64,000 nucleotides of DNA from Cyanophora paradoxa CCMP329. Lineage: Eukaryota > Plantae > Glaucophyta. The notes beneath the pieces are model-generated. The model ran no database searches. It saw nothing but the letters and a program-made list of their open reading frames with translations, and had not been told where the DNA came from. Position numbers and translations under genes: made by a program. Shown here piece after piece: positions 30,286 to 37,862 of this stretch; position 1 is the stretch's first letter, and the number at the start of each line of letters is the position of its first letter. The stretch spans positions 59,149 to 123,148 of the forward strand of contig QPMI01000242.1 of NCBI GenBank assembly GCA_004431415.1. Direction: 5' to 3'.

Positions 30286-31330
30286 TCACTTGTGGCGGAG
30301 GCGGGCCTCGAAGCGGTCGAGTTCCGAGCTGCTCTCCTTCGCCTCCCGCGCCGCCTCGCGTGCCAACTCCCGCGCCTCCTCCTCCTGCCCCGTGTCAGCC
30401 AGCCCAGAGCGCCCCGGGCCGCCCCCTGCGCACCTCCTCGGACATCGCCCGCACAGGCGGGTTCACAGGCCCCTTGCGCGGCGCCGACTGCATCGGCGCG
30501 GCCTGCTTCTTCATCACCGGCGGGCCCTTCGGGACGTGGACTGCGCTGTCAGGGTCAGGACGGCGGCCGGCCGCTCGAGTGGCGTCTGCGAGCGGCGTAC
30601 TTGGCGGTTTACTTGCGGGCGCCGACGCCTTTGTGCTCCGCGGCTTTTCTCCGCGCAGCCTCCGCTCGAACTCGTCGATGTCTGCAGCGCGGCCAAGCTG
30701 CGATCAGCCCCACTGCCGTGGCTCGCTGCAACGCGTCTAGCGCGCCTTTTGCAGAGTCCACAGGGGTAGTCTCTGGCTCAGGCATGTACGTGTCCTCCAG
30801 GTCGGCGCTCACTTTAGTCACGGGCGACGCGCGGGCGACAGCTGCAGAGCCGGAACCTGCCGCCGGCCCTCCTGACGCAGAGCGCTGCACGCCTGCTCTT
30901 CTCATCGTCTGCCGCTGGGGTGTCGTGTGGGCCAGAGGAGCTGTTGTCACAATCGTAATCGGTGCTGCTGTCGGCCGTGTGGGGTGCCGTAATCGTAATC
31001 GCACTCACAGCTAGCCTGTGCGGAGCAGATATGCGGGCTAAATGCGAAGCGAAGAAGCTGCTGTTGCTGGAGGGGGAAGAAGCGGGGGCTACATGTACAG
31101 CAACGTTGGAAACCTGATGCGTCGCCTGTGCTAGTTCGAGTATGCACGCGGTGCGGTTCTCCCGCGCAGCGCGCGGCTTTGAGCGCTGCGGCGGCGGCAC
31201 CGGTAGCGCATTGGCAACCGCGGCTGAGCCCGGCGGCCGCGGCGGCACTGGTCGCGGTGTTGAGCACGGCGGCGGCGCTGTTGCGCGTTGCATCAGAGTT
31301 CAGCGCGTCAACTGCACTGCCCTGATCATG
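30286..31330 (-). CDS. Unknown low-complexity protein, convergent with the methyltransferase
   Basis: 3' exons read ...KGPPVMKKQAAPMQSAPRKGPVNPPVRAMSE|EEEARELAREAAREAKESSSELDRFEARLRHK*. 5' end uncertain. Confidence 0.45.
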
Positions 31331-31680
31331 AGCTGGTCCCCCGGGGGAGCCAGCGCTAGCGCTTCCCCCGGGGGAGCCCCGGGGGAGCCCCGAGCCCGCC
31401 GCCCCTCGTCGCCGCCCTCTAGATCTGCGAAGATACCTAGGCTTTCTCCCCCGGCTCGAGCTCCGCTTCACGCCGACCCCTGAACCAGCGCTAGCGCTAG
31501 CTGCAGTGCTCGCTATAGCTCTCCGACGAACTCGCCATCCGCGACTCATCTTTGACGAACTTGCCATCCGCGACTCATCTCGGACTGGGCAGTCCGAGTT
31601 GCGGGTACAGTCGTAGATGAGTCTCAGCAGACATTTGCTGTGTCCATGGATGCCCGCGCTCTTCAGGGGCAGAGGGGGCG

Positions 31681-34600
31681 CTAGGTGGGGGCGGGGGCCG
31701 GGGCAGCGAGGGCGTGGTAGAGGGGTACCAGGCACCTGCAGCCCGCTCGCCTCTCTGGGGCGCGGCGCGGGCGGCCGGCGGGCGGGCGGGGCGGACCAGG
31801 CGCTGCCGGGCGCCGCGGTCAGAGGACGGGGCGGCCCGAGGGTCAAGGTTGAGAACGGCAGCGCACTCTAAGGCGGCGTACTCCAGCTGGGCAGGCGGCA
31901 GCGGCCGCCGCTCCCAGTTGAAGATCTTCCCGAGTTGCGCCGGCGCCGGGCCAGGGGTAAGAGATCGAAACGGGGTTTGGAATGTGAGCAAAGTGCACCT
32001 GGGGTCGCTTGTCGAGCGGGCGCCCGAGCACGCGCTCCACGGCCCCTGCCAGCGACGGCAGCGCCCTGCCCGCCCCGCCATCAGCCGCCCCGCCCAGCCC
32101 GCAGCAAACGGCGCCGGCAAGGCGACCTGCGGGCCCCCGGGGCGGGGCGGGGCAGCTGGCGGGCGCAGAGTGTCTGGCGGTGTATGCGTGAGGCGGGGAG
32201 GGGGGGCGGGGTGAGGGCAGGGGAGGCGCCTGCAGGTCCACGAGGGGTGCGACCGCCCCCCGCTGCTGCACCCCCGCGAGCGCGGGGAACGAGGCCGAGA
32301 GCGCTGCGCCGGGTGAGGCCCCGCGCGCGGCGCGGCGCGGCGCCGCGCGGTGGTGCGTACATTTGAGATCCGAGGCGAAGGAGAAGCCGAGCTGCGGGGT
32401 GCGTGAGAACCGGGGCCGAGGGGCCGGGGGCGGTGACTGGGGCGGGCCTTGAGGTGGTGCGGGGAGCGGAAGAGGGCGGCGAGGAGGGCGGGGCCGGCCT
32501 CGGGGAGGGCGAGCACGTCGAGGAGCCTGCGCACGCGGTCATTCAGATGACCGCGGGGCGCGTGAAGAGCGTGCGACGTGCCAGGCGCGGTCGGCGGTGG
32601 CGAGCTGCACGAGCGCCGTGCGCTTCGCGTGGCGCCACTCGCTGTCGAGGCCCACCACCAGGAGCCCCGCCTGCGCCCCGTCGGCCCCCGCGCGGCAGCG
32701 GCGCGGGCCGGGGCGGGCACGGGGGGTTGTGCCGGGGGCAGCTGGAGGGCGGCGGCGAGCTCCGCGAGGGCCTCCGCCGTCTCCACCCACGCCACCGGCA
32801 CCGGCAGACGCAGGAACTCGCTCCCCTCCCCCGCCTCTGCGCCCCGTCAGCCGCCTGCGCAGAGGCGGGGCCGGGTGGGGGACCCTGGGGCGGGGGGCCG
32901 GCGGAGGCGAGGAAGTCGGGGAGCGGGGGCAGGGGCCGGGGGAGGGCGTCGGCGTCGGGGCGGAGCGGAGCGAACTCCGCCTCGCCGAGGAGCCCGAAGT
33001 GGAGCGCCACGCGCGCCGCGAACGCCCGGCGCCCCCCGGGGACGAGGCCCTCGCGCCCCACCCCGAGCAGCAACAGCCGGGCGAGGGCGCGCTGCAGGGC
33101 GGGGCGGCCCTCGGCGAGCGCGAGGGCCGCCTCCACGGCCCCGCCGTAGAGGGCGGCCTTCACGGCGGCGGCCTCCTCGAGCTCGCAGAGGCGCGGGAAG
33201 CGCTCCTTCACGCCGAGCTCCTCGGCGAGGGCGACGAGGGAGGCGAGGGGCACGCGGCGGGTGCGCTCCTCGGGCGGCTGCTCGGGGCGGCCGCCGCGGG
33301 GCGCGGGGGCGCGGTAGAGGGCCCCCTCGAAGGCCCCCCCGAGGGCGGCCAGGCAGAAGGCGACGAAGGCCTCGCGGGCGGGGGCGGGGTAGGGGGCGAG
33401 GAGGCGGGCGGCGAGGGGCAGGAGGCGGTGGGCGAGGAGCGGGGCGTGCAGCTCCTCGAGCCCCGCCCACCGCCCGGGAACGCCTCGGCGATGAACCCCA
33501 TCGCCACCTGCCCGCCCCTCGCTTCCCCCGCCGCCGGCCTGGCGCGGGGCGGGGCCGGCGCGCCTGCGCGGTCGAGCAGCAGCCGGCGGCGCGCGCCTCC
33601 TCGAGCACCGCCCGCGCCCCGGCCTCCGCCTCCCGCTCGCCCGCCTCCGCCTGCCCCGCCCGTCGGCCCCGAGGGGCGCCGCGGCGCGGTGCGCACGAGG
33701 AGGGCCTGCAGGGCGAGGGCGAGGAGGGAGCTCGGTAGCGGCCGCTTGGGCGCCCCGCGCGCGCGCCCCGCGGCGGCGGCGGCGGCGCGGCGGCGGGCGA
33801 CGGCGGCGGCCTCCTGGAAGGCCCGCGCCGCCGCCGCCCGCGCCTCCACCTCTTCCCGCCCGCACGCCCGCCGCGCCCCGGCCCGGCGCCCCGCAGCACC
33901 GGCCTCGCCCTCCTCGGGCCCCGGGTCGTCTCCTGGCCCGGGCCCATCGCCCGGCCCCTCGCATGCTACCGCTGAAGCCGCGCTGGCACCCTCCGTCGCC
34001 TCCTCCGGAGGCGCCGGCTCGCACACCGTGCTCCCCGCCTCCTCCCGCTCGCACGCCCTGCGCGGCGGCTCGATCCATGCGGCGGCGCGGGCGGGGCCAG
34101 GGGCGGGGGCGGGCGGGCCTGGCGGCGCGGGAGCGGGAGACAACGCGGGCGATTTCGGCGGCGAGGCCAGCCGGCTCGCGCGCACCGCGGAAGAGGCCGC
34201 GCAAGGCGGCGCGCACGGCGGCGTGCTGAAAGCTGCGGAGCGGGTCGGGGCGGGGGGCGCGGGGGCGCGGGGGGCGGGGACCGGCGGAGGGCGCAGTCGT
34301 GGTGGAAGCGGTCGGCGCAGGCCCGCAGCGCCCCCTCCACGTCCCCCGCCGCCACCTCCACCGCCTCCTCCCACACCGCCCCCGCCTCCCCCTCCCCCGC
34401 CCTCCCCTCCGCCTCCTCCGCCCCCGCTGCCTCCTCGCCAGCCGCGCGGCGGGGGACCGCAGGGCGGGACGCGCTTGGGCCGCTGGGCGCCCTCTTGCCG
34501 CGCTTGGCGCGGCACTGCTTGAAGACGGGCGGGGCGGCCGGCTCGCAGGCCATCGTGTCGAGCAGGCCGGCGAGGAGGCGCCGGCCGTCGGCGCGCGCCT

Positions 34601-35045
34601 CCGTGTGGCACGCACCGCACGCGAGCCAGACCTGGAAGACCGGATACGCGGCGCGCCGGGAGAGGGTGACTCCGAGTACAGAGTCGCGCTCACAGGACTC
34701 CTCTTCCAGCGCCGCGAGGCCCCCGTCCAGCGCCGCCGCGACCAGCGCCTCCCACGCTCGCGCCGCATCCGCCTCCGCGGTACGCACGATCCAGAAGCCG
34801 CCAGAGGCGAGCGCTTCGTGCTCCCACACTGGCACGGGTCAGCGCGCGGCCCCGCTCGCGGGCCGATGGCACGCACCGGGCAGCACGTCGCCTCGCATCA
34901 GATGCACGCGGCGGCGCGCGTAGCCGTCGAGCCTTGCGATGGCCGCTGCCACGTCTCCTGGCGTCTGCACCTCTGCGACGTGAAAGAGCGACTTGACGTA
35001 ATCGTTCTCCTCGCGTCGGTGCGCGTAGCAGCGCCATGGCGGCAT
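31681..35045 (-). CDS. Fusion gene: N-terminal eIF4E-like cap-binding domain, helical region, C-terminal MUT-7/EXD3-type DEDDy 3'-5' exonuclease
   Basis: eIF4E-like: PWRCYAH..NDYVKSL, LMRGDVLPVWEHEALASGGFW, AWEALV, VLGVTLSRR, FQVW. Exonuclease: VGLDSEW (ExoI), ALVQLAT, KLGFSFASDL (ExoII), LVDLQ, SLAGAVERVLGRPLDK, NWERRPL..QLEYAALDAWCLVPLY (ExoIII). Confidence 0.8.
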
Positions 35046-35391
35046 CGGTTTAGCTAGCAATAGCGCCGATCACTTCAGCATGTATGTTTCTCGAAGTGCA
35101 ATAGCGCCGATCACTGCTGGGGTACCGGATACCGACAACTCGCAAAAGCTCCAACACTCCGACAGTCAGGACCTGTCAGGTACCGGCCAGTGGCGCCCGT
35201 CTCGTGGGCGAGCCCCCCGGACGCGAAGGGCCTCAAGACGTTCAATCGCTCTCTATAACAGAAGAATAACGTCCGCTGCCGCCGACCGAGCTGTCGGGTT
35301 GTTTCTCTCGTTCGTAGGCAGCCCGCGAACGGATTCGCGACCTTGGGCTGATAGCGGAGCACCGAATTCTAATTAGTAGCCCGGTGGCAGC

Positions 35392-37862
35392 ATGGCCGCT
35401 AGGCCCTTGAACACGCCGACGTTGGGGGCGCCGCCGCCCCCGCTGCTGGACGACCCTCCGGCCCCCCCCAGCCTTGAGTCGATGGCGATCCCTTCGATGG
35501 ATGTCTCGTCTCCCGAGGGAGTGCCCGCGAGCTACGCGAACATGTGCGTGTTCGGTTAACTGCTCCGAGCCGCCTCGAAGGCGACGGTGACACGAGCTCC
35601 AGGTACGGCCACACGATGGAAACCCCATCTCCCTCGGCGATGGACCTGAACCAAGTTCGCGTGAACGTGTCGAACGCGCCTGGCACGCTGGGCGCGACGA
35701 GGCCCGGTCTGCCGGGGATCCCGGGCGCTCCCGCGCCTGGCACGCTGGGCGCGACGAGGCCCGGCCTGCCGGGGATCCCGGGCGCTCCCGCGCCTGGCAC
35801 GTTGGGCGCGACGAGGCCCGGCCTGCCGGGGATCCCCGGCGCTCCCGCGCCGGGCGCGGCGGGCGCTGGGAGGTCCGGCCTGCAGCCCTTGAGCACGACG
35901 GGGCCGGAGGCGCCGGACGGGGCGGGCGGGCCGCCGGTGCCGGGGCGGGCGCAGCTGCAGAGCGCGAGCGGGCGGAAGTTCTCGGTGTCGGGGCGGAAGG
36001 CGAGCAACCTGTGGATGGGGAAGCGGCGGGCGTCGCAGCTGGCGAGCGACTACTACACGAACGAGCTGCACCGGCTGGCCGTGGAGCAGGCGAGCCCGAA
36101 GTCGTGCTGGACGCCGGGCGTCATCATCTGCTGCATCATCGTCTTCCTCTGCGTCGCGGCCGCCGTGGTCGTCCCCTCCGTCATCCTCACGCGCCCCGGG
36201 AGCAGCCCGACGCCCTCGCCCTCGCCCAGCCCGACCCCCTCCCCCATCCCCATCGTCGAGACGCTCGTCTTCGAGGACAGCTTCGAGGGCAGCGCCCTCG
36301 ACCGCTCAAAGTGGAACGTGCGCCTCCCGCTGCAGCCCCGGCCCCGCTTCCCGCCCCCCGCCGCCTCGGCGTGCGACGGGCCGGTGGCAGGTGGAGGTGA
36401 GCGCGGCGGGGGGCGGCAACTGGGAGTTCCAGGTCTACTTGAACAAGGAGGCCTCGACACCGCCCGGCAACTTCTACGTGAGCGGCAGCAAGCTGCGCAT
36501 GCGGCCGACCCTCACAGAGAACCTCCCGCACAACATCACCCACGCGCCGCTCAACCTGACGGAGAACGCACCCGGCTGCAACAACAAGTACGGCGGCTGC
36601 TGCACGGACACCTCCAGAGCTTCCCTCGTGGACTTCGCTGGCTGCGAGAGGTCCGAAATTTGAAGTTCTACCGCTGCCTGAGTTCCGCGCCGGCGGGAGG
36701 CGCCTTACGGGGAGTGCAGGGACCCCGCCAAGCCGACGGATAGCCCGACGGGGATTGTCAACCCCGTGGCGAGCGCCCGCATCAACACGCGCAACAAACC
36801 CGGCGGCCACATCAAGTACGGCCGGGTGCGAGCGCCCGCACCGGCAGCGGCGGATGCGGCGGCGGCCTGAGGCGCGGGCAGGTGGAGGTGAAGGCGCGGA
36901 TGCCGCGGGGCCGCTGGCTCTGGCCGGCGATCTGGATGCTCCCCGTGAACGAGACGTACGGGGAGTGGCCCCTCAGCGGCGAGATCGACATCGCCGAGGG
37001 CTGGGGCAACCCCCGCACCAGCGGCGACGACGACATGCCCGGCGTCCACATGGTCACCTCGACGCTCCACTGGGGCATCGGCTACCCCTCGATGTACACC
37101 ATGACGCAGTGGACCCAGATCCGCCAAGCCTCGCCGAGCCCCGCCGACTTCGCCACGCAAGAGATCATCTACGGCCTCTACTGGGACGAGAAGGCGCCGC
37201 CCCCGCCCTCCCCCGCCTCTTGAGCGCCTCGCGAGCGCTGCCCACAGGAACTCCGCACGTACTACAAGCTCTCGGAGAACGACGTGCAAAACCCGATCTC
37301 TGAATTCAAATTCCCGGAGAACGGCTTCTTCAAATTCGCCGGGTCTCGCTGGCCCATCGGCAGCAAAGACCCCTGGGGCGGCAAGTGCGCGACGCGCCCC
37401 GCACCCCCGGGCGCACGGCGCGGGAAGCGCTGAGAGGCGGGCAGATCGAACGCGCCCTTCGACCAGCCCTTCTACCTGATCATCAACCTCGCGGTTGGCG
37501 GCACCATGGGCTACTGGTCCAAGTTCGAGAGCATCGGCCAAGCCGCCTGGAGCGGTGTCCCCCCGGGCAAGGTGCGCCATCCGCGTCCCGACCCGCCCCC
37601 GCTCGCTCCGGCCTCTCCCCCGCCCACCTCTCGCGCCCCATGACGCTCGTTCCCTGCAGGAGATGAAGAAGTTCTATGAGGCGAAGGACACGTGGAGCGG
37701 GGGGGCAAACGGCCAAGGCTGGTGGCCCGAGTGGCAGGCCCAGGGCTCCAACAACGAGTTTGTCGTACGGCCCGCGCCCCGCTCCCTTCCTATGTGTCCC
37801 CAATGCGCCCGCAGATCGACTGGGTCAAGATGTGGGAGCGTCGCCCCCAGACCTCCAAGTAG
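35392..37862 (+). CDS. Membrane-anchored GH16 beta-1,3-glucanase/laminarinase-like protein
   Basis: TM segment (GVIICCIIVFLCVAAAVVVPSVIL), LVFEDSF, GGGNWEFQVY, KYGRVEVKARMPRGRWLWPAIWMLP, WPLSGEIDIAE (ExDxxE intact), APFDQPFYLIINLAVGG, IDWVKMW. Confidence 0.92.
35675..35855 (+). repeat. Coding tandem repeat (APGTLGATRPGLPGIPGAP x3) in the GH16 N-terminal tail
   Basis: Three near-identical in-frame units. Confidence 0.9.

What the first reader, a model, noticed from the sequence alone, without database searches (positions are those of the whole stretch)
31681..35045. eIF4E-like cap-binding domain fused to a MUT-7/EXD3-type 3'-5' exonuclease
Seen: one exon chain with no intergenic gap runs from an eIF4E-like fold to a complete DEDDy domain. 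By-eye alignment suggests the cap-contact positions are kept (PVWEH = W102/E103, Tyr at W56, SRR = R157, QVW = W166), while the dorsal TVEDFW motif that binds eIF4G/4E-BP is lost (TPGDVA). No Mut7-C domain follows. Established: MUT-7/Nibbler trim small-RNA 3' ends in transposon silencing, and PARN is a cap-stimulated 3' exonuclease with a different cap-binding fold. Inference: a cap-tethered 3' trimming or decay enzyme rather than an initiation factor. I do not recognise this architecture.
Basis: partly seen in the sequence, partly recalled or inferred. Interest (0 to 1): 0.8.

Follow-up and report, generated by a model that had tools for sequence, protein, structure and literature searches.

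The report
Cap-binding domain fused to RNA-trimming exonuclease
One expressed, spliced gene of a very GC-rich alga-like eukaryote joins an eIF4E-type mRNA-cap-binding domain to a Nibbler/MUT-7-type 3'-5' RNA exonuclease, a combination found in no other protein searched, which suggests an enzyme that holds an RNA by its cap while trimming its tail.

Summary
On the minus strand, ATG 35045 to TAG 31681, lies one gene whose N-terminus is a complete eIF4E fold. Pfam IF4E scores 42.5 bits, the AlphaFold model has pLDDT 90.7, and Foldseek gives TM about 0.74 to eIF4E/4EHP. Its C-terminus is a complete DEDDy exonuclease (Pfam PF01612, 69 bits) whose nearest solved relative is the Nibbler EXO domain.

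RNA contigs from two studies confirm nine introns. They also show that the window lacks one base at 33475/33476; with that base, the frames join.

No stop codon exists in any frame between 33965 and 33211. Codon periodicity is continuous from the cap-binding domain into the exonuclease part. An existing EukProt model (822 aa) already joins both domains.

No single RNA contig bridges about 55-105 nt of low-complexity exon (about 34330-34436). A DNA contig breaks there too, so I read the break as an assembly artefact.

The cap-contact residues are kept (Tyr16, Trp58, Glu59, Arg115, Trp124). The eIF4G/4E-BP surface is lost (Trp73 to Ala).

A HMMER search of 1.84 billion representative proteins found no second protein with this architecture.

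Verdict: a real, apparently lineage-specific fusion. A cap-tethered 3' trimming or decay role is inferred, not shown.

The parts
31681..35045 (-). Whole coding region: ATG at 35045 to TAG at 31683-31681. The RNA-informed local model has 15 exons and 875 aa.
   Evidence: Six-frame reading; RNA joints; local joined translation is open from ATG to TAG; 100% match to the EukProt model P0001.
34503..35045 (-). eIF4E-like (class III-like) cap-binding domain, aa 1 to about 165. It is encoded by exon 1 (35045-34877) and the first part of exon 2 (34828 onwards).
   Evidence: Pfam IF4E 42.5 bits; PDB phmmer best hit eIF4E3 4b6u, E 6.8e-9; AF2 pLDDT 90.7; Foldseek TM 0.70-0.75 to eIF4E/4EHP.
34829..34876 (-). 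Intron 1, 48 nt, GT-AG. It splits the domain just before PVWEH.
   Evidence: Joint 34828>34877 in RNA contigs of X1, X4 and X5.
33476..34502 (-). Ala/Gly/Arg/Glu/Pro-rich linker, about 300 aa, coding throughout. It contains the candidate intron 34281-34233, the RNA-proven GC-AG intron 34118-34058, and an unresolved frame change around 33700-33540.
   Evidence: Codon-periodicity scan; joint 34056>34118; intron features.
34233..34281 (-). Candidate intron, 49 nt, GT-AG, 69% C. It moves the eIF4E frame into the downstream frame. RNA evidence was not displayed here because the reads tool masked 34231-34436.
   Evidence: Size, acceptor and composition fit the nine RNA-proven introns. The periodicity switch from F1 to F2 falls exactly here. 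The intron is used in P0001.
33475..33476 (-). Single-base discrepancy. RNA contigs carry one extra G (plus strand) between these positions. With it, ...MGFIAEAF reads straight on into PGRWAGLEEL...
   Evidence: table 4 (X1 and X4, from two studies); sequence read.
32884..33475 (-). All-helical domain in front of the exonuclease, a candidate counterpart of the Nibbler/MUT-7 NTD.
   Evidence: Strongest codon periodicity of the gene. The AF2 model is all-alpha, with block pLDDT 60-87. It aligns weakly with the region before the EXO domain of oomycete and algal relatives.
31684..32836 (-). DEDDy 3'-5' exonuclease domain in 10 small exons. Motifs: ExoI GLDSEW, ExoII FASDLK, ExoIII YAALDAW.
   Evidence: Pfam PF01612 69 bits; PDB best hit Nibbler EXO 7jw2, E 3.5e-13; Foldseek ranks 1-3 are Nibbler EXO; one RNA contig carries the seven joints between 32064 and 32884.
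31797..31802 (-). 6-nt micro-exon CGCCTG, flanked by introns of 64 and 61 nt. It supplies Asp-Ala-Trp of the ExoIII motif.
   Evidence: Coordinates. It is used in P0001. YAA.DA is invariant in 7 of 7 relatives. No RNA joint was displayed for it.
32230..32303 (-). Exon whose 3' part (VQQRGAVAPLVDLQ) is missing from the database model P0001. RNA uses a GC donor at 32229.
   Evidence: Joints 32173>32230 and 32303>32361; comparison of the models; PLVDLQ matches VVDLQ/LVDLQ/VVDLR in relatives.

Best explanation
This is one nuclear gene of a very GC-rich, alga-like eukaryote. The EukProt identifier style, the roughly 80% GC and the frequent GC-AG introns make me think of Cyanophora paradoxa; that is my inference and no tool showed it.

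The gene encodes a protein of about 875 aa with four parts in order:
1. A class III-like eIF4E domain that starts at residue 1.
2. A disordered linker of about 300 aa.
3. A helical domain.
4. A Nibbler/MUT-7-type DEDDy 3'-5' exonuclease domain, with no MUT7-C domain after it.

Proposed mechanism (inferred): the eIF4E-like domain binds the m7G cap between Tyr16 and Trp58, helped by Glu59, Arg115 and Trp124. It cannot recruit eIF4G or 4E-BPs, because the dorsal Val69/Trp73 positions are Pro/Ala and the N-terminal His-Pro-Leu segment is absent. The long flexible linker lets the exonuclease reach the 3' end of the same capped RNA. The enzyme would therefore trim or degrade Pol II-capped RNAs (mRNA tails, snRNA or snoRNA precursors, or capped small-RNA precursors) in cis. 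This would be a one-polypeptide analogue of cap-stimulated PARN, or of 4EHP-recruited deadenylation.

Shown: the gene structure, expression and splicing, both folds, residue conservation, and the absence of the architecture elsewhere in the libraries searched. Inferred: cap binding, RNA substrate, action in cis, and biological role.

The confidence given is for the single-gene fusion with an intact cap pocket and an intact active site. For the specific cap-tethered trimming or decay mechanism I would give about 0.4.
For: Single gene:
- RNA contigs from runs X1, X4 and X5 (two studies) carry GT-AG or GC-AG joints on the minus strand along the gene. They include intron 1 inside the eIF4E domain, the intron at 34118-34058 in the linker, and seven introns in the exonuclease part.
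- The RNA contigs supply the base that the window lacks at 33475/33476.
- All three minus-strand frames are free of stops from 33965 to 33211.
- Third-position A/T depletion is continuous: F1 35078-34290, F2 to 34120, F0 to about 33700, then F2 33475-32884.
- The joined local model is open from ATG to TAG.
- The independent EukProt model P0001 joins both Pfam domains.
- The RNA contig break near 34437 coincides, within about 30 nt, with the end of DNA contig X10. It therefore reflects a low-complexity tract and not a transcript end.

eIF4E domain:
- Pfam 42.5 bits.
- Best PDB hits by sequence: eIF4E3 at E 6.8e-9, 4EHP at 5.8e-7.
- AF2 pLDDT 90.7, pTM 0.86.
- Foldseek probability 1.00, TM 0.70-0.75, with only eIF4E-family hits.
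- Cap-pocket columns are conserved, while the dorsal columns (V 48 of 77, F 63 of 79, W 61 of 79 in relatives) are P, V and A here.
- The residue roles come from PMC4306533.

Exonuclease domain:
- Pfam 69 bits.
- Nibbler EXO is the best hit by sequence and by structure.
- D, E, D, Y and D are all in place.

Uniqueness:
- phmmer of aa 1-170 against 1.84 billion representatives gave only the protein itself below 1e-10. The 102 other hits are ordinary eIF4E proteins, and the long ones carry IF4E only.
- A word search with the exonuclease region found no other PF01612+PF01652 protein.
- The 30 nearest Atlas structures are IF4E-only.
Against: - No displayed RNA contig bridges about 34330/34380-34436, and the reads tool masked 34231-34436. 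The 49-nt intron that puts the two domains in frame is therefore supported only by its features, by periodicity and by the database model.
- The frame path through 33700-33540 is unresolved.
- There are no orthologues, so purifying selection cannot be measured. A young, functionless fusion cannot be excluded.
- Several positions that are nearly invariant in relatives are changed: Asn to Leu63, Lys to Glu75, Gly to Asp91, Asn to Leu125.
- Two phosphate-contacting residues of eIF4E1 (Arg112, Lys162) are Phe and Val. eIF4E3 and 4EHP show the same kind of change and bind the cap much more weakly than eIF4E1.
- MUT7-C is absent. In C. elegans MUT-7 it mediates the enzyme's activity and localization (PMC11347159).
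- The model of the exonuclease part is only of moderate confidence (pLDDT 62.9).
Confidence: 0.8

Rival explanations
1. The eIF4E-like domain no longer binds the m7G cap. It serves instead as a protein-protein or general RNA-binding module, or recognises another 5' end. In that case the protein is simply a Nibbler/MUT-7-like small-RNA or ncRNA trimmer with an unusual N-terminal adaptor.
For: - Arg112 and Lys162 equivalents are lost, and Asn63, Lys75, Gly91 and Asn125, nearly invariant in relatives, are changed.
- Class II and III eIF4Es bind the cap 1-2 orders of magnitude more weakly than eIF4E1 (PMC4306533).
- The domain scores only 42.5 bits against Pfam IF4E, whereas ordinary members score 120-185 bits.
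Against: - Exactly the m7G-contacting set is retained: an aromatic residue at the W56 column, plus W102, E103, R157 and W166.
- The partner-binding dorsal surface is the part that decayed.
- The fold is predicted with high confidence.
Confidence: 0.3
2. There are two adjacent same-strand genes, a small eIF4E-like gene and a Nibbler-like exonuclease gene. They were merged by the gene predictor and by eye because stop codons are rare at about 80% GC.
For: - No displayed RNA contig spans about 34330-34436.
- Open frames are uninformative at this GC content.
- An in-frame ATG (33503, MGFIAEAF...) could start a stand-alone helical-domain-plus-EXO protein.
Against: - Between 34838 and 33211 the only stop in any frame is the frame-1 stop at 33968-33966. 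That frame is not reached with the RNA-proven splice at 34118-34058 and the periodicity-supported frames.
- Coding periodicity is at its strongest (0-2 A/T at third positions per 96 nt) exactly in the unbridged stretch.
- Spliced RNA covers 33816-34230 between the two domains.
- A DNA contig breaks at the same low-complexity tract.
Confidence: 0.08
3. It is a young, lineage-specific fusion that is transcribed but has no selected function. It could be decaying, with the frameshift at 33475 being real in the sequenced strain.
For: - It is a singleton with no orthologue in 1.84 billion representatives.
- The window itself carries a frame-breaking 1-base difference.
- The linker is long and of low complexity.
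Against: - RNA from two studies carries the intact frame.
- All five catalytic residues and the cap-contact residues are intact, and a 6-nt micro-exon is maintained.
- The strict third-position G/C bias is kept across the whole ORF.
Confidence: 0.1

Closest known systems
Drosophila Nibbler / C. elegans MUT-7 / human EXD3 (MUT-7 family of DEDDy 3'-5' exoribonucleases)
   Same: - The exonuclease domain is closest to Nibbler EXO by sequence (7jw2, E 3.5e-13) and by structure.
- The DEDDy motifs are complete.
- A helical region precedes the EXO domain, as in the NTD-EXO layout described in PMC11347159.
- MUT7-C is missing, as in Nibbler.
   Different: - None of these proteins carries an eIF4E domain.
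- The helical region could not be shown to be the HEAT-like NTD.
- The nearest sequence relatives are oomycete and green-algal proteins, not animal ones.
eIF4E class III (eIF4E3) and class II (4EHP/eIF4E2)
   Same: - It has the same alpha+beta fold.
- The best PDB sequence hit is eIF4E3, and the HLMR...PxWE motif matches.
- Trp is kept at the W43 column and Tyr stands at the W56 column (4EHP stacks the cap between Tyr78 and Trp124; PMC4306533).
- Arg112 and Lys162 are not conserved in those classes either.
- The closest database relatives are named eIF4E type 3-like.
   Different: - The dorsal eIF4G/4E-BP site is lost (Pro29, Val32 and Ala33 in place of Val, Phe and Trp).
- There is no N-terminal extension.
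- It is fused to about 700 further residues that include a nuclease.
- It is only 20-30% identical to any relative.
PARN, poly(A)-specific ribonuclease
   Same: It works like the proposed mechanism: one polypeptide combines m7G-cap recognition with a DEDD-superfamily 3'-5' exoribonuclease, and cap binding promotes 3' shortening. This comes from established knowledge and was not tested here.
   Different: - PARN's nuclease is a CAF1-type DEDDh domain.
- Its cap contact comes from an RRM and the nuclease domain, not from an eIF4E fold.
- There is no sequence relationship, so this is convergence at most.
Cap-binding repressors that recruit decay enzymes in trans (4EHP-GIGYF2/4E-T with CCR4-NOT; trypanosome EIF4E1-4EIP)
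   Same: A non-initiating eIF4E paralogue marks a capped mRNA for 3' decay or repression.
   Different: There the nuclease is recruited through adaptor proteins that bind the dorsal surface. Here that surface is lost and the nuclease is linked covalently.

Membership tests
eIF4E family (Pfam PF01652) | Profile match above Pfam's gathering score | tested here: met
   42.5 bits against a cut-off of 28.7, aa 4-126 of P0001. Exon 2 alone scores 32 bits.
eIF4E family (Pfam PF01652) | Curved beta-sheet backed by three helices (the eIF4E fold) | tested here: met
   AF2 pLDDT 90.7 and pTM 0.86. Foldseek probability 1.00, TM 0.70-0.75; all top hits are eIF4E or 4EHP. The Atlas neighbours are IF4E-only.
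eIF4E family (Pfam PF01652) | m7G-contacting residues: an aromatic residue at W56, plus W102, E103, R157 and W166 | tested here: met
   Tyr16, Trp58, Glu59, Arg115 and Trp124 fall in these alignment columns. The residue list is from PMC4306533.
eIF4E family (Pfam PF01652) | Phosphate-contacting Arg112 and Lys162 of class I | tested here: not met
   They are Phe68 and Val120 here. The same positions are Val/Val in eIF4E3 in the alignment.
eIF4E family (Pfam PF01652) | Dorsal eIF4G/4E-BP-binding site (Val69, Trp73) | tested here: not met
   Pro29 and Ala33 stand where relatives have Val (48 of 77) and Trp (61 of 79). The protein starts at the W43-equivalent strand.
eIF4E family (Pfam PF01652) | Binds m7GTP or capped RNA | not testable with these tools
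   This needs biochemistry.
MUT-7 / Nibbler / EXD3 family | DEDDy exonuclease domain (PF01612) with all five catalytic residues | tested here: met
   69 bits. D and E lie in GLDSEW, D in FASDLK, and Y and D in YAALDA. The last Asp depends on the 6-nt micro-exon 31802-31797.
MUT-7 / Nibbler / EXD3 family | Closer to MUT-7/Nibbler than to RNase D, RRP6, WRN-exo, EXD1 or EXD2 | tested here: met
   PDB phmmer E-values: Nibbler 3.5e-13, RNase D 7.9e-8, RRP6 1.5e-4, WRN 4e-3, EXD2 8e-3. Foldseek ranks 1-3 are Nibbler EXO. No tree was built.
MUT-7 / Nibbler / EXD3 family | HEAT-like helical N-terminal domain before the EXO domain | tested here: inconclusive
   The region is predicted all-helical, but at block pLDDT 32-87, and Foldseek matched only the EXO part. 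The alignment to relatives is weak. The Atlas feature score of 0.81 is only a lead.
MUT-7 / Nibbler / EXD3 family | C-terminal MUT7-C domain (PF01927); present in MUT-7 and EXD3, absent in Nibbler | tested here: not met
   There is no Pfam hit, the stop codon comes 7 residues after the EXO match, and downstream frames are empty.
PARN | CAF1-type DEDDh nuclease with R3H and RRM domains | tested here: not met
   Only PF01612 (DEDDy) and PF01652 were found. PARN is a functional analogue and not the family.

The most novel reading that the evidence does not exclude
The protein is a self-contained, cap-selective 3' trimming enzyme. An eIF4E3-type domain picks out m7G-capped RNAs, and a Nibbler-type exonuclease shortens their 3' ends in cis. 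This would be a convergent replacement for PARN-like activity. It would also be a 'Rosetta stone' fusion predicting that class III eIF4E and MUT-7/EXD3-type nucleases cooperate in trans in other eukaryotes.
Probability: 0.3. Interest if true: 0.75.

Novelty: new variant of a known kind. Interest (0 to 1): 0.6.

Why it matters
eIF4E-family proteins are almost always small single-domain proteins that act through partners bound on their dorsal face. Here that face has decayed, the cap pocket is kept, and a 3'-5' exoribonuclease is attached covalently. That is what one would expect if cap recognition had been re-used to aim a nuclease.

If the biochemistry bears this out, it would be a second, independent way, besides PARN, to couple the two ends of an RNA in one decay or trimming enzyme. 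It would also give a testable hint about the poorly understood class III eIF4Es and about EXD3/MUT-7 outside animals.

The limits are that it is a singleton in one genome and that nothing about its substrate is known.

Tried and rejected
- The word search with the helical-domain exon found only the protein itself.
- The word search with the linker (P0001:130-330), meant to catch peptides from RNA contigs that bridge the gap, found nothing.
- I rejected the reading YAALE (Asp to Glu in ExoIII) from a single 131-nt intron. Two introns of 64 and 61 nt around a 6-nt micro-exon fit better: all proven introns are 47-61 nt, the motif YAALDAW matches Nibbler's YAALDAF residue for residue, and the database model uses this micro-exon.
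- I considered that the break in the RNA contigs at 34437 marks a transcript end. I rejected this because the DNA contig of X10 ends within about 30 nt of it, and because the tool reports masking of 34231-34436.
- The Atlas feature search on the helical domain gave only sub-threshold leads (0.81).
- Pfam scans of neighbouring ORFs gave nothing.
- Paper searches for an eIF4E-exonuclease fusion, or for eIF4E in Cyanophora, gave nothing relevant.
- The RNA-informed 875-aa joined model was built and translated only in a local script. The database model P0001 and single exons by reference were used instead. As a result the exonuclease model was folded without the 14 residues VQQRGAVAPLVDLQ.
Full report
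**What is in the sequence**

The region is about 70-85% G+C, so open reading frames are nearly meaningless here. The gene lies on the minus strand.

The first in-frame ATG after an upstream stop is at 35045. The reading MPPWRCYAHRREENDY... runs to 34877. A 48-nt GT-AG intron follows, and the frame then continues with VWEHEALASGGFWIV....

Pfam recognises IF4E in exon 2 alone (E 1.3e-7, 32 bits, cut-off 28.7). The exonuclease is cut into many small exons and is invisible to Pfam exon by exon.

**An existing model**

A word search with the longest clean exon (window:32546-34897:-, residues 476-669) returned a single protein, P0001. It is 822 aa, 100% identical, and its source is EukProt, id tig00001029_g6433.t1. 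PF01612 and PF01652 are precomputed for it.

My own scan gives IF4E at aa 4-126 (E 7.4e-11, 42.5 bits) and DNA_pol_A_exo1 at aa 645-815 (E 5.6e-19, 69 bits).

From the identifier style, the extreme GC content and the GC-AG introns I suspect Cyanophora paradoxa. This is my inference from memory and not a tool result.

**RNA evidence**

Eleven runs of one organism hold part of the stretch. I laid contigs of four runs on 30400-36300. X10 behaves as DNA, with no joints. X1, X4 and X5, from two studies, behave as RNA.

They carry these joints, which translate into minus-strand introns:

| Intron (window coordinates) | Type |
|---|---|
| 34876-34829 | GT-AG |
| 34118-34058 | GC-AG, after the permitted 1-nt shift |
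| 32883-32837 | GT-AG |
| 32720-32671 | GT-AG |
| 32581-32527 | GC-AG |
| 32447-32392 | GC-AG |
| 32360-32304 | GT-AG |
| 32229-32174 | GC-AG |
| 32126-32066 | GT-AG |

In each RNA run one contig carries all seven joints from 32064 to 32884.

The RNA contigs of X1 and X4 also hold one extra G after plus-strand position 33475. On the minus strand this turns ttcccggg into ttccccggg and makes ...QVAMGFIAEAF read on into PGRWAGLEELHAPLL.... The window therefore has a 1-base deletion there, either an assembly error or a strain difference. The database model worked around it with a wrong local structure.

Upstream, the RNA contigs end at 35100-35122. A divergent plus-strand transcript starts at about 35165, so no further 5' exon is likely.

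**Is it one gene?**

For:

1. A locally joined model uses the RNA joints, the extra base, the candidate intron 34281-34233 and the database model's last three exons. It is open from ATG 35045 to TAG 31681 and is 875 aa long.
2. Between 33965 and 33211 no frame has a stop. Between 34838 and 33211 the only stop is the frame-1 stop at 33968-33966. The RNA-proven splice and the periodicity-supported frames do not reach it.
3. A sliding count of A/T at third codon positions shows an unbroken coding signal: frame 1 from 35078 to about 34290, frame 2 to about 34120, frame 0 to about 33700, and frame 2 from 33475 to 32884. The strongest values of the whole gene lie in the linker at 34454-34263.
4. The candidate intron 34281-34233 is 49 nt long, GT..CGCAG, and 69% C. 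It looks like the nine proven introns, which are 47-61 nt, mostly C-rich, and have CAG acceptors. It sits exactly where the periodicity changes from frame 1 to frame 2.
5. Spliced RNA covers 33816-34230, between the two domains.

Against:

- The displayed RNA contigs do not bridge about 34330/34380-34436. One contig covers 35122-34437. The next reaches 34230 plus 101 unplaced letters.
- The tool masked 34231-34436 as repeat. The DNA contig of X10 also ends within about 30 nt of 34437. I therefore read the break as a de Bruijn-graph break in the GGAGG-rich tract and not as a transcript end.

I put about 0.85-0.9 on a single gene.

The path through 33700-33540 is not settled. Periodicity favours frame 1 (AEAGEREAEAGARAVLEE...) for about 80 nt. 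The 46-nt GT-AG intron 33696-33651 of the database model explains the entry into that frame. A 56-nt GC-AG candidate at 33594-33539 (donor GCGCGCC), or another missing base, could explain the exit.

**The eIF4E-like domain**

- phmmer against PDB sequences gives eIF4E3 (4b6u) at E 6.8e-9, 4EHP at 5.8e-7 and yeast eIF4E at 5e-5.
- A HMMER search of aa 1-170 against 1.84 billion representatives found 103 proteins at E up to 1e-3. Only the protein itself scores below 1e-10. The next best is a 178-aa protein at E 2.1e-9.
- The named hits among them are eIF4E type 3-like.
- With 82 of these as an alignment, AlphaFold2 gives mean pLDDT 90.7 and pTM 0.86, with the expected strand-helix order.
- Foldseek returns only eIF4E or 4EHP chains at the top (probability 1.00, TM 0.70-0.75).

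Column by column:

| Residue here | Human eIF4E position | Relatives in that column |
|---|---|---|
| Trp4 | W43 | W 55 of 66 |
| Tyr16 | W56 | Y 56, F 8, C 8 |
| Trp58 | W102 | 80 of 82 |
| Glu59 | E103 | 78 of 82 |
| Trp69 | W113 | not recorded here |
| Trp82 | W130 | not recorded here |
| Arg115 | R157 | R 57, K 23 |
| Trp124 | W166 | 81 of 82 |

PMC4306533 lists Trp56, Trp102, Glu103, Trp166, Arg112, Arg157 and Lys162 as the cap pocket. It states that 4EHP stacks the cap between Tyr78 and Trp124. It also states that classes II and III bind far more weakly than eIF4E1.

Here Arg112 and Lys162 are Phe68 and Val120; in eIF4E3 both positions are Val.

The dorsal motif T-V-x-x-F-W reads T-P-G-D-V-A. 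The protein begins three residues before the W43-equivalent, so the N-terminal part of the partner site is absent.

Four nearly invariant positions are also changed: Asn to Leu63, Lys to Glu75, Gly to Asp91, and Asn to Leu125. This is the main reason for caution about cap affinity.

**The exonuclease part**

- phmmer of P0001:440-822 against PDB gives Nibbler EXO domains first (7jw2 at E 3.5e-13, 7jw6 at 7.7e-10). RNase D (7.9e-8), RRP6, WRN and EXD2 follow.
- Foldseek on a moderate model (pLDDT 62.9) again ranks Nibbler EXO first.
- ExoI (GLDSEW), ExoII (FASDLK) and ExoIII (YAALDAW) are present.
- The ExoIII Asp comes from a 6-nt micro-exon (31802-31797) between introns of 64 and 61 nt. Without it the motif would read YAALE and be two residues short. 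With it the motif matches Nibbler's YAALDAFCLLEIY position for position, and YAA.DA is invariant in all seven aligned relatives. No RNA joint for it was among those displayed.
- The RNA joints add 14 residues (VQQRGAVAPLVDLQ) that the database model lacks. These match VVDLQ/LVDLQ/VVDLR in relatives.
- The 190 residues before the EXO domain are predicted all-helical and align loosely with the pre-EXO region of oomycete and algal relatives. That fits the NTD-EXO layout described for Nibbler and MUT-7 (PMC11347159), but I could not show homology.
- There is no MUT7-C domain.

**Is the architecture known or widespread?**

- Among the eIF4E-domain hits, the long proteins (1011, 554, 439 and 403 aa) carry IF4E only.
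- Among nine exonuclease relatives from the word search, only P0001 has both domains. The others combine PF01612 with Mut7-C and YbaK, with ankyrin repeats, or with HRDC.
- The 30 nearest Atlas structures are IF4E-only.
- Full-text searches found no description of such a fusion. The 2024 MUT-7 family paper does not mention eIF4E or caps.

So the architecture exists as an unremarked predicted protein in one database and, as far as these searches reach, in nothing else.

The exonuclease and helical domains were not searched exhaustively, because the single exhaustive job went to the eIF4E domain. A distant fusion with an unrecognisable eIF4E part could have been missed.

**Mechanism**

My preferred reading is a cap-tethered 3'-5' exoribonuclease. 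The N-terminal domain holds the m7G cap, and the linker of about 300 residues gives the helical-plus-EXO module the reach to engage the 3' end of the same RNA.

This works like PARN, and like 4EHP-type repressors that bring in deadenylases. It is not a member of the PARN family.

Which capped RNAs are targeted is open. The rivals are weighed in their own sections: a non-cap-binding adaptor domain, two genes, and a functionless young fusion.

**Verdict**

- It is a new variant: a new combination of two known domains, so far a singleton.
- Interest is moderate to high.

Noticed in passing
window 33475-33476: The window lacks one base relative to RNA contigs of two studies (an extra G on the plus strand). 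This breaks the reading frame of the gene and has distorted the public gene model (P0001) locally. It is probably a homopolymer deletion in a long-read assembly. Other GC-rich genes of this assembly may carry similar errors.
   Followed up: partly
window 32174-34118 (introns 34118-34058, 32581-32527, 32447-32392, 32229-32174): Four of the nine RNA-proven introns of this gene are GC-AG, with donors GCCCGCC, GCACGTC, GCCCGCC and GCGCCTC. All nine introns are 47-61 nt long. This agrees with the other notes on this genome about frequent GC-AG introns.
   Followed up: partly
window 31797-31802: A 6-nt micro-exon (CGCCTG), flanked by 64- and 61-nt introns, is needed to encode the catalytic Asp of the ExoIII motif. 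No RNA joint for it was among those displayed.
   Followed up: partly
window 32230-32303: The public model P0001 uses a GT donor inside this exon and so drops 14 residues (VQQRGAVAPLVDLQ). RNA contigs use the GC donor at 32229. The gene predictor seems to under-call GC donors.
   Followed up: yes
window 35165-36300 (+ strand): A divergently transcribed plus-strand gene starts only about 45-65 nt from the 5' end of the RNA contigs of the fusion gene (35100-35122 against 35165), and it has a GT-AG intron at 35544-35602. Its ORF holds three tandem copies of a 19-aa Pro/Gly-rich unit (PGTLGATRPGLPGIPGAPA), followed by a hydrophobic segment. It has no Pfam hit.
   Followed up: partly
window 30540-31069 (- strand): Another spliced minus-strand transcript lies downstream. 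It has introns at 30541-30600 (GT-AG) and 30682-30745 (GC-AG). Its ORFs have no Pfam hit.
   Followed up: partly
window 34503-34540 (aa about 157-168): A basic cluster, KQCRAKRGKRAP, directly follows the eIF4E-like domain. It could be a nuclear localisation signal, which would point to nuclear capped RNAs as substrates. This was not tested.
   Followed up: no
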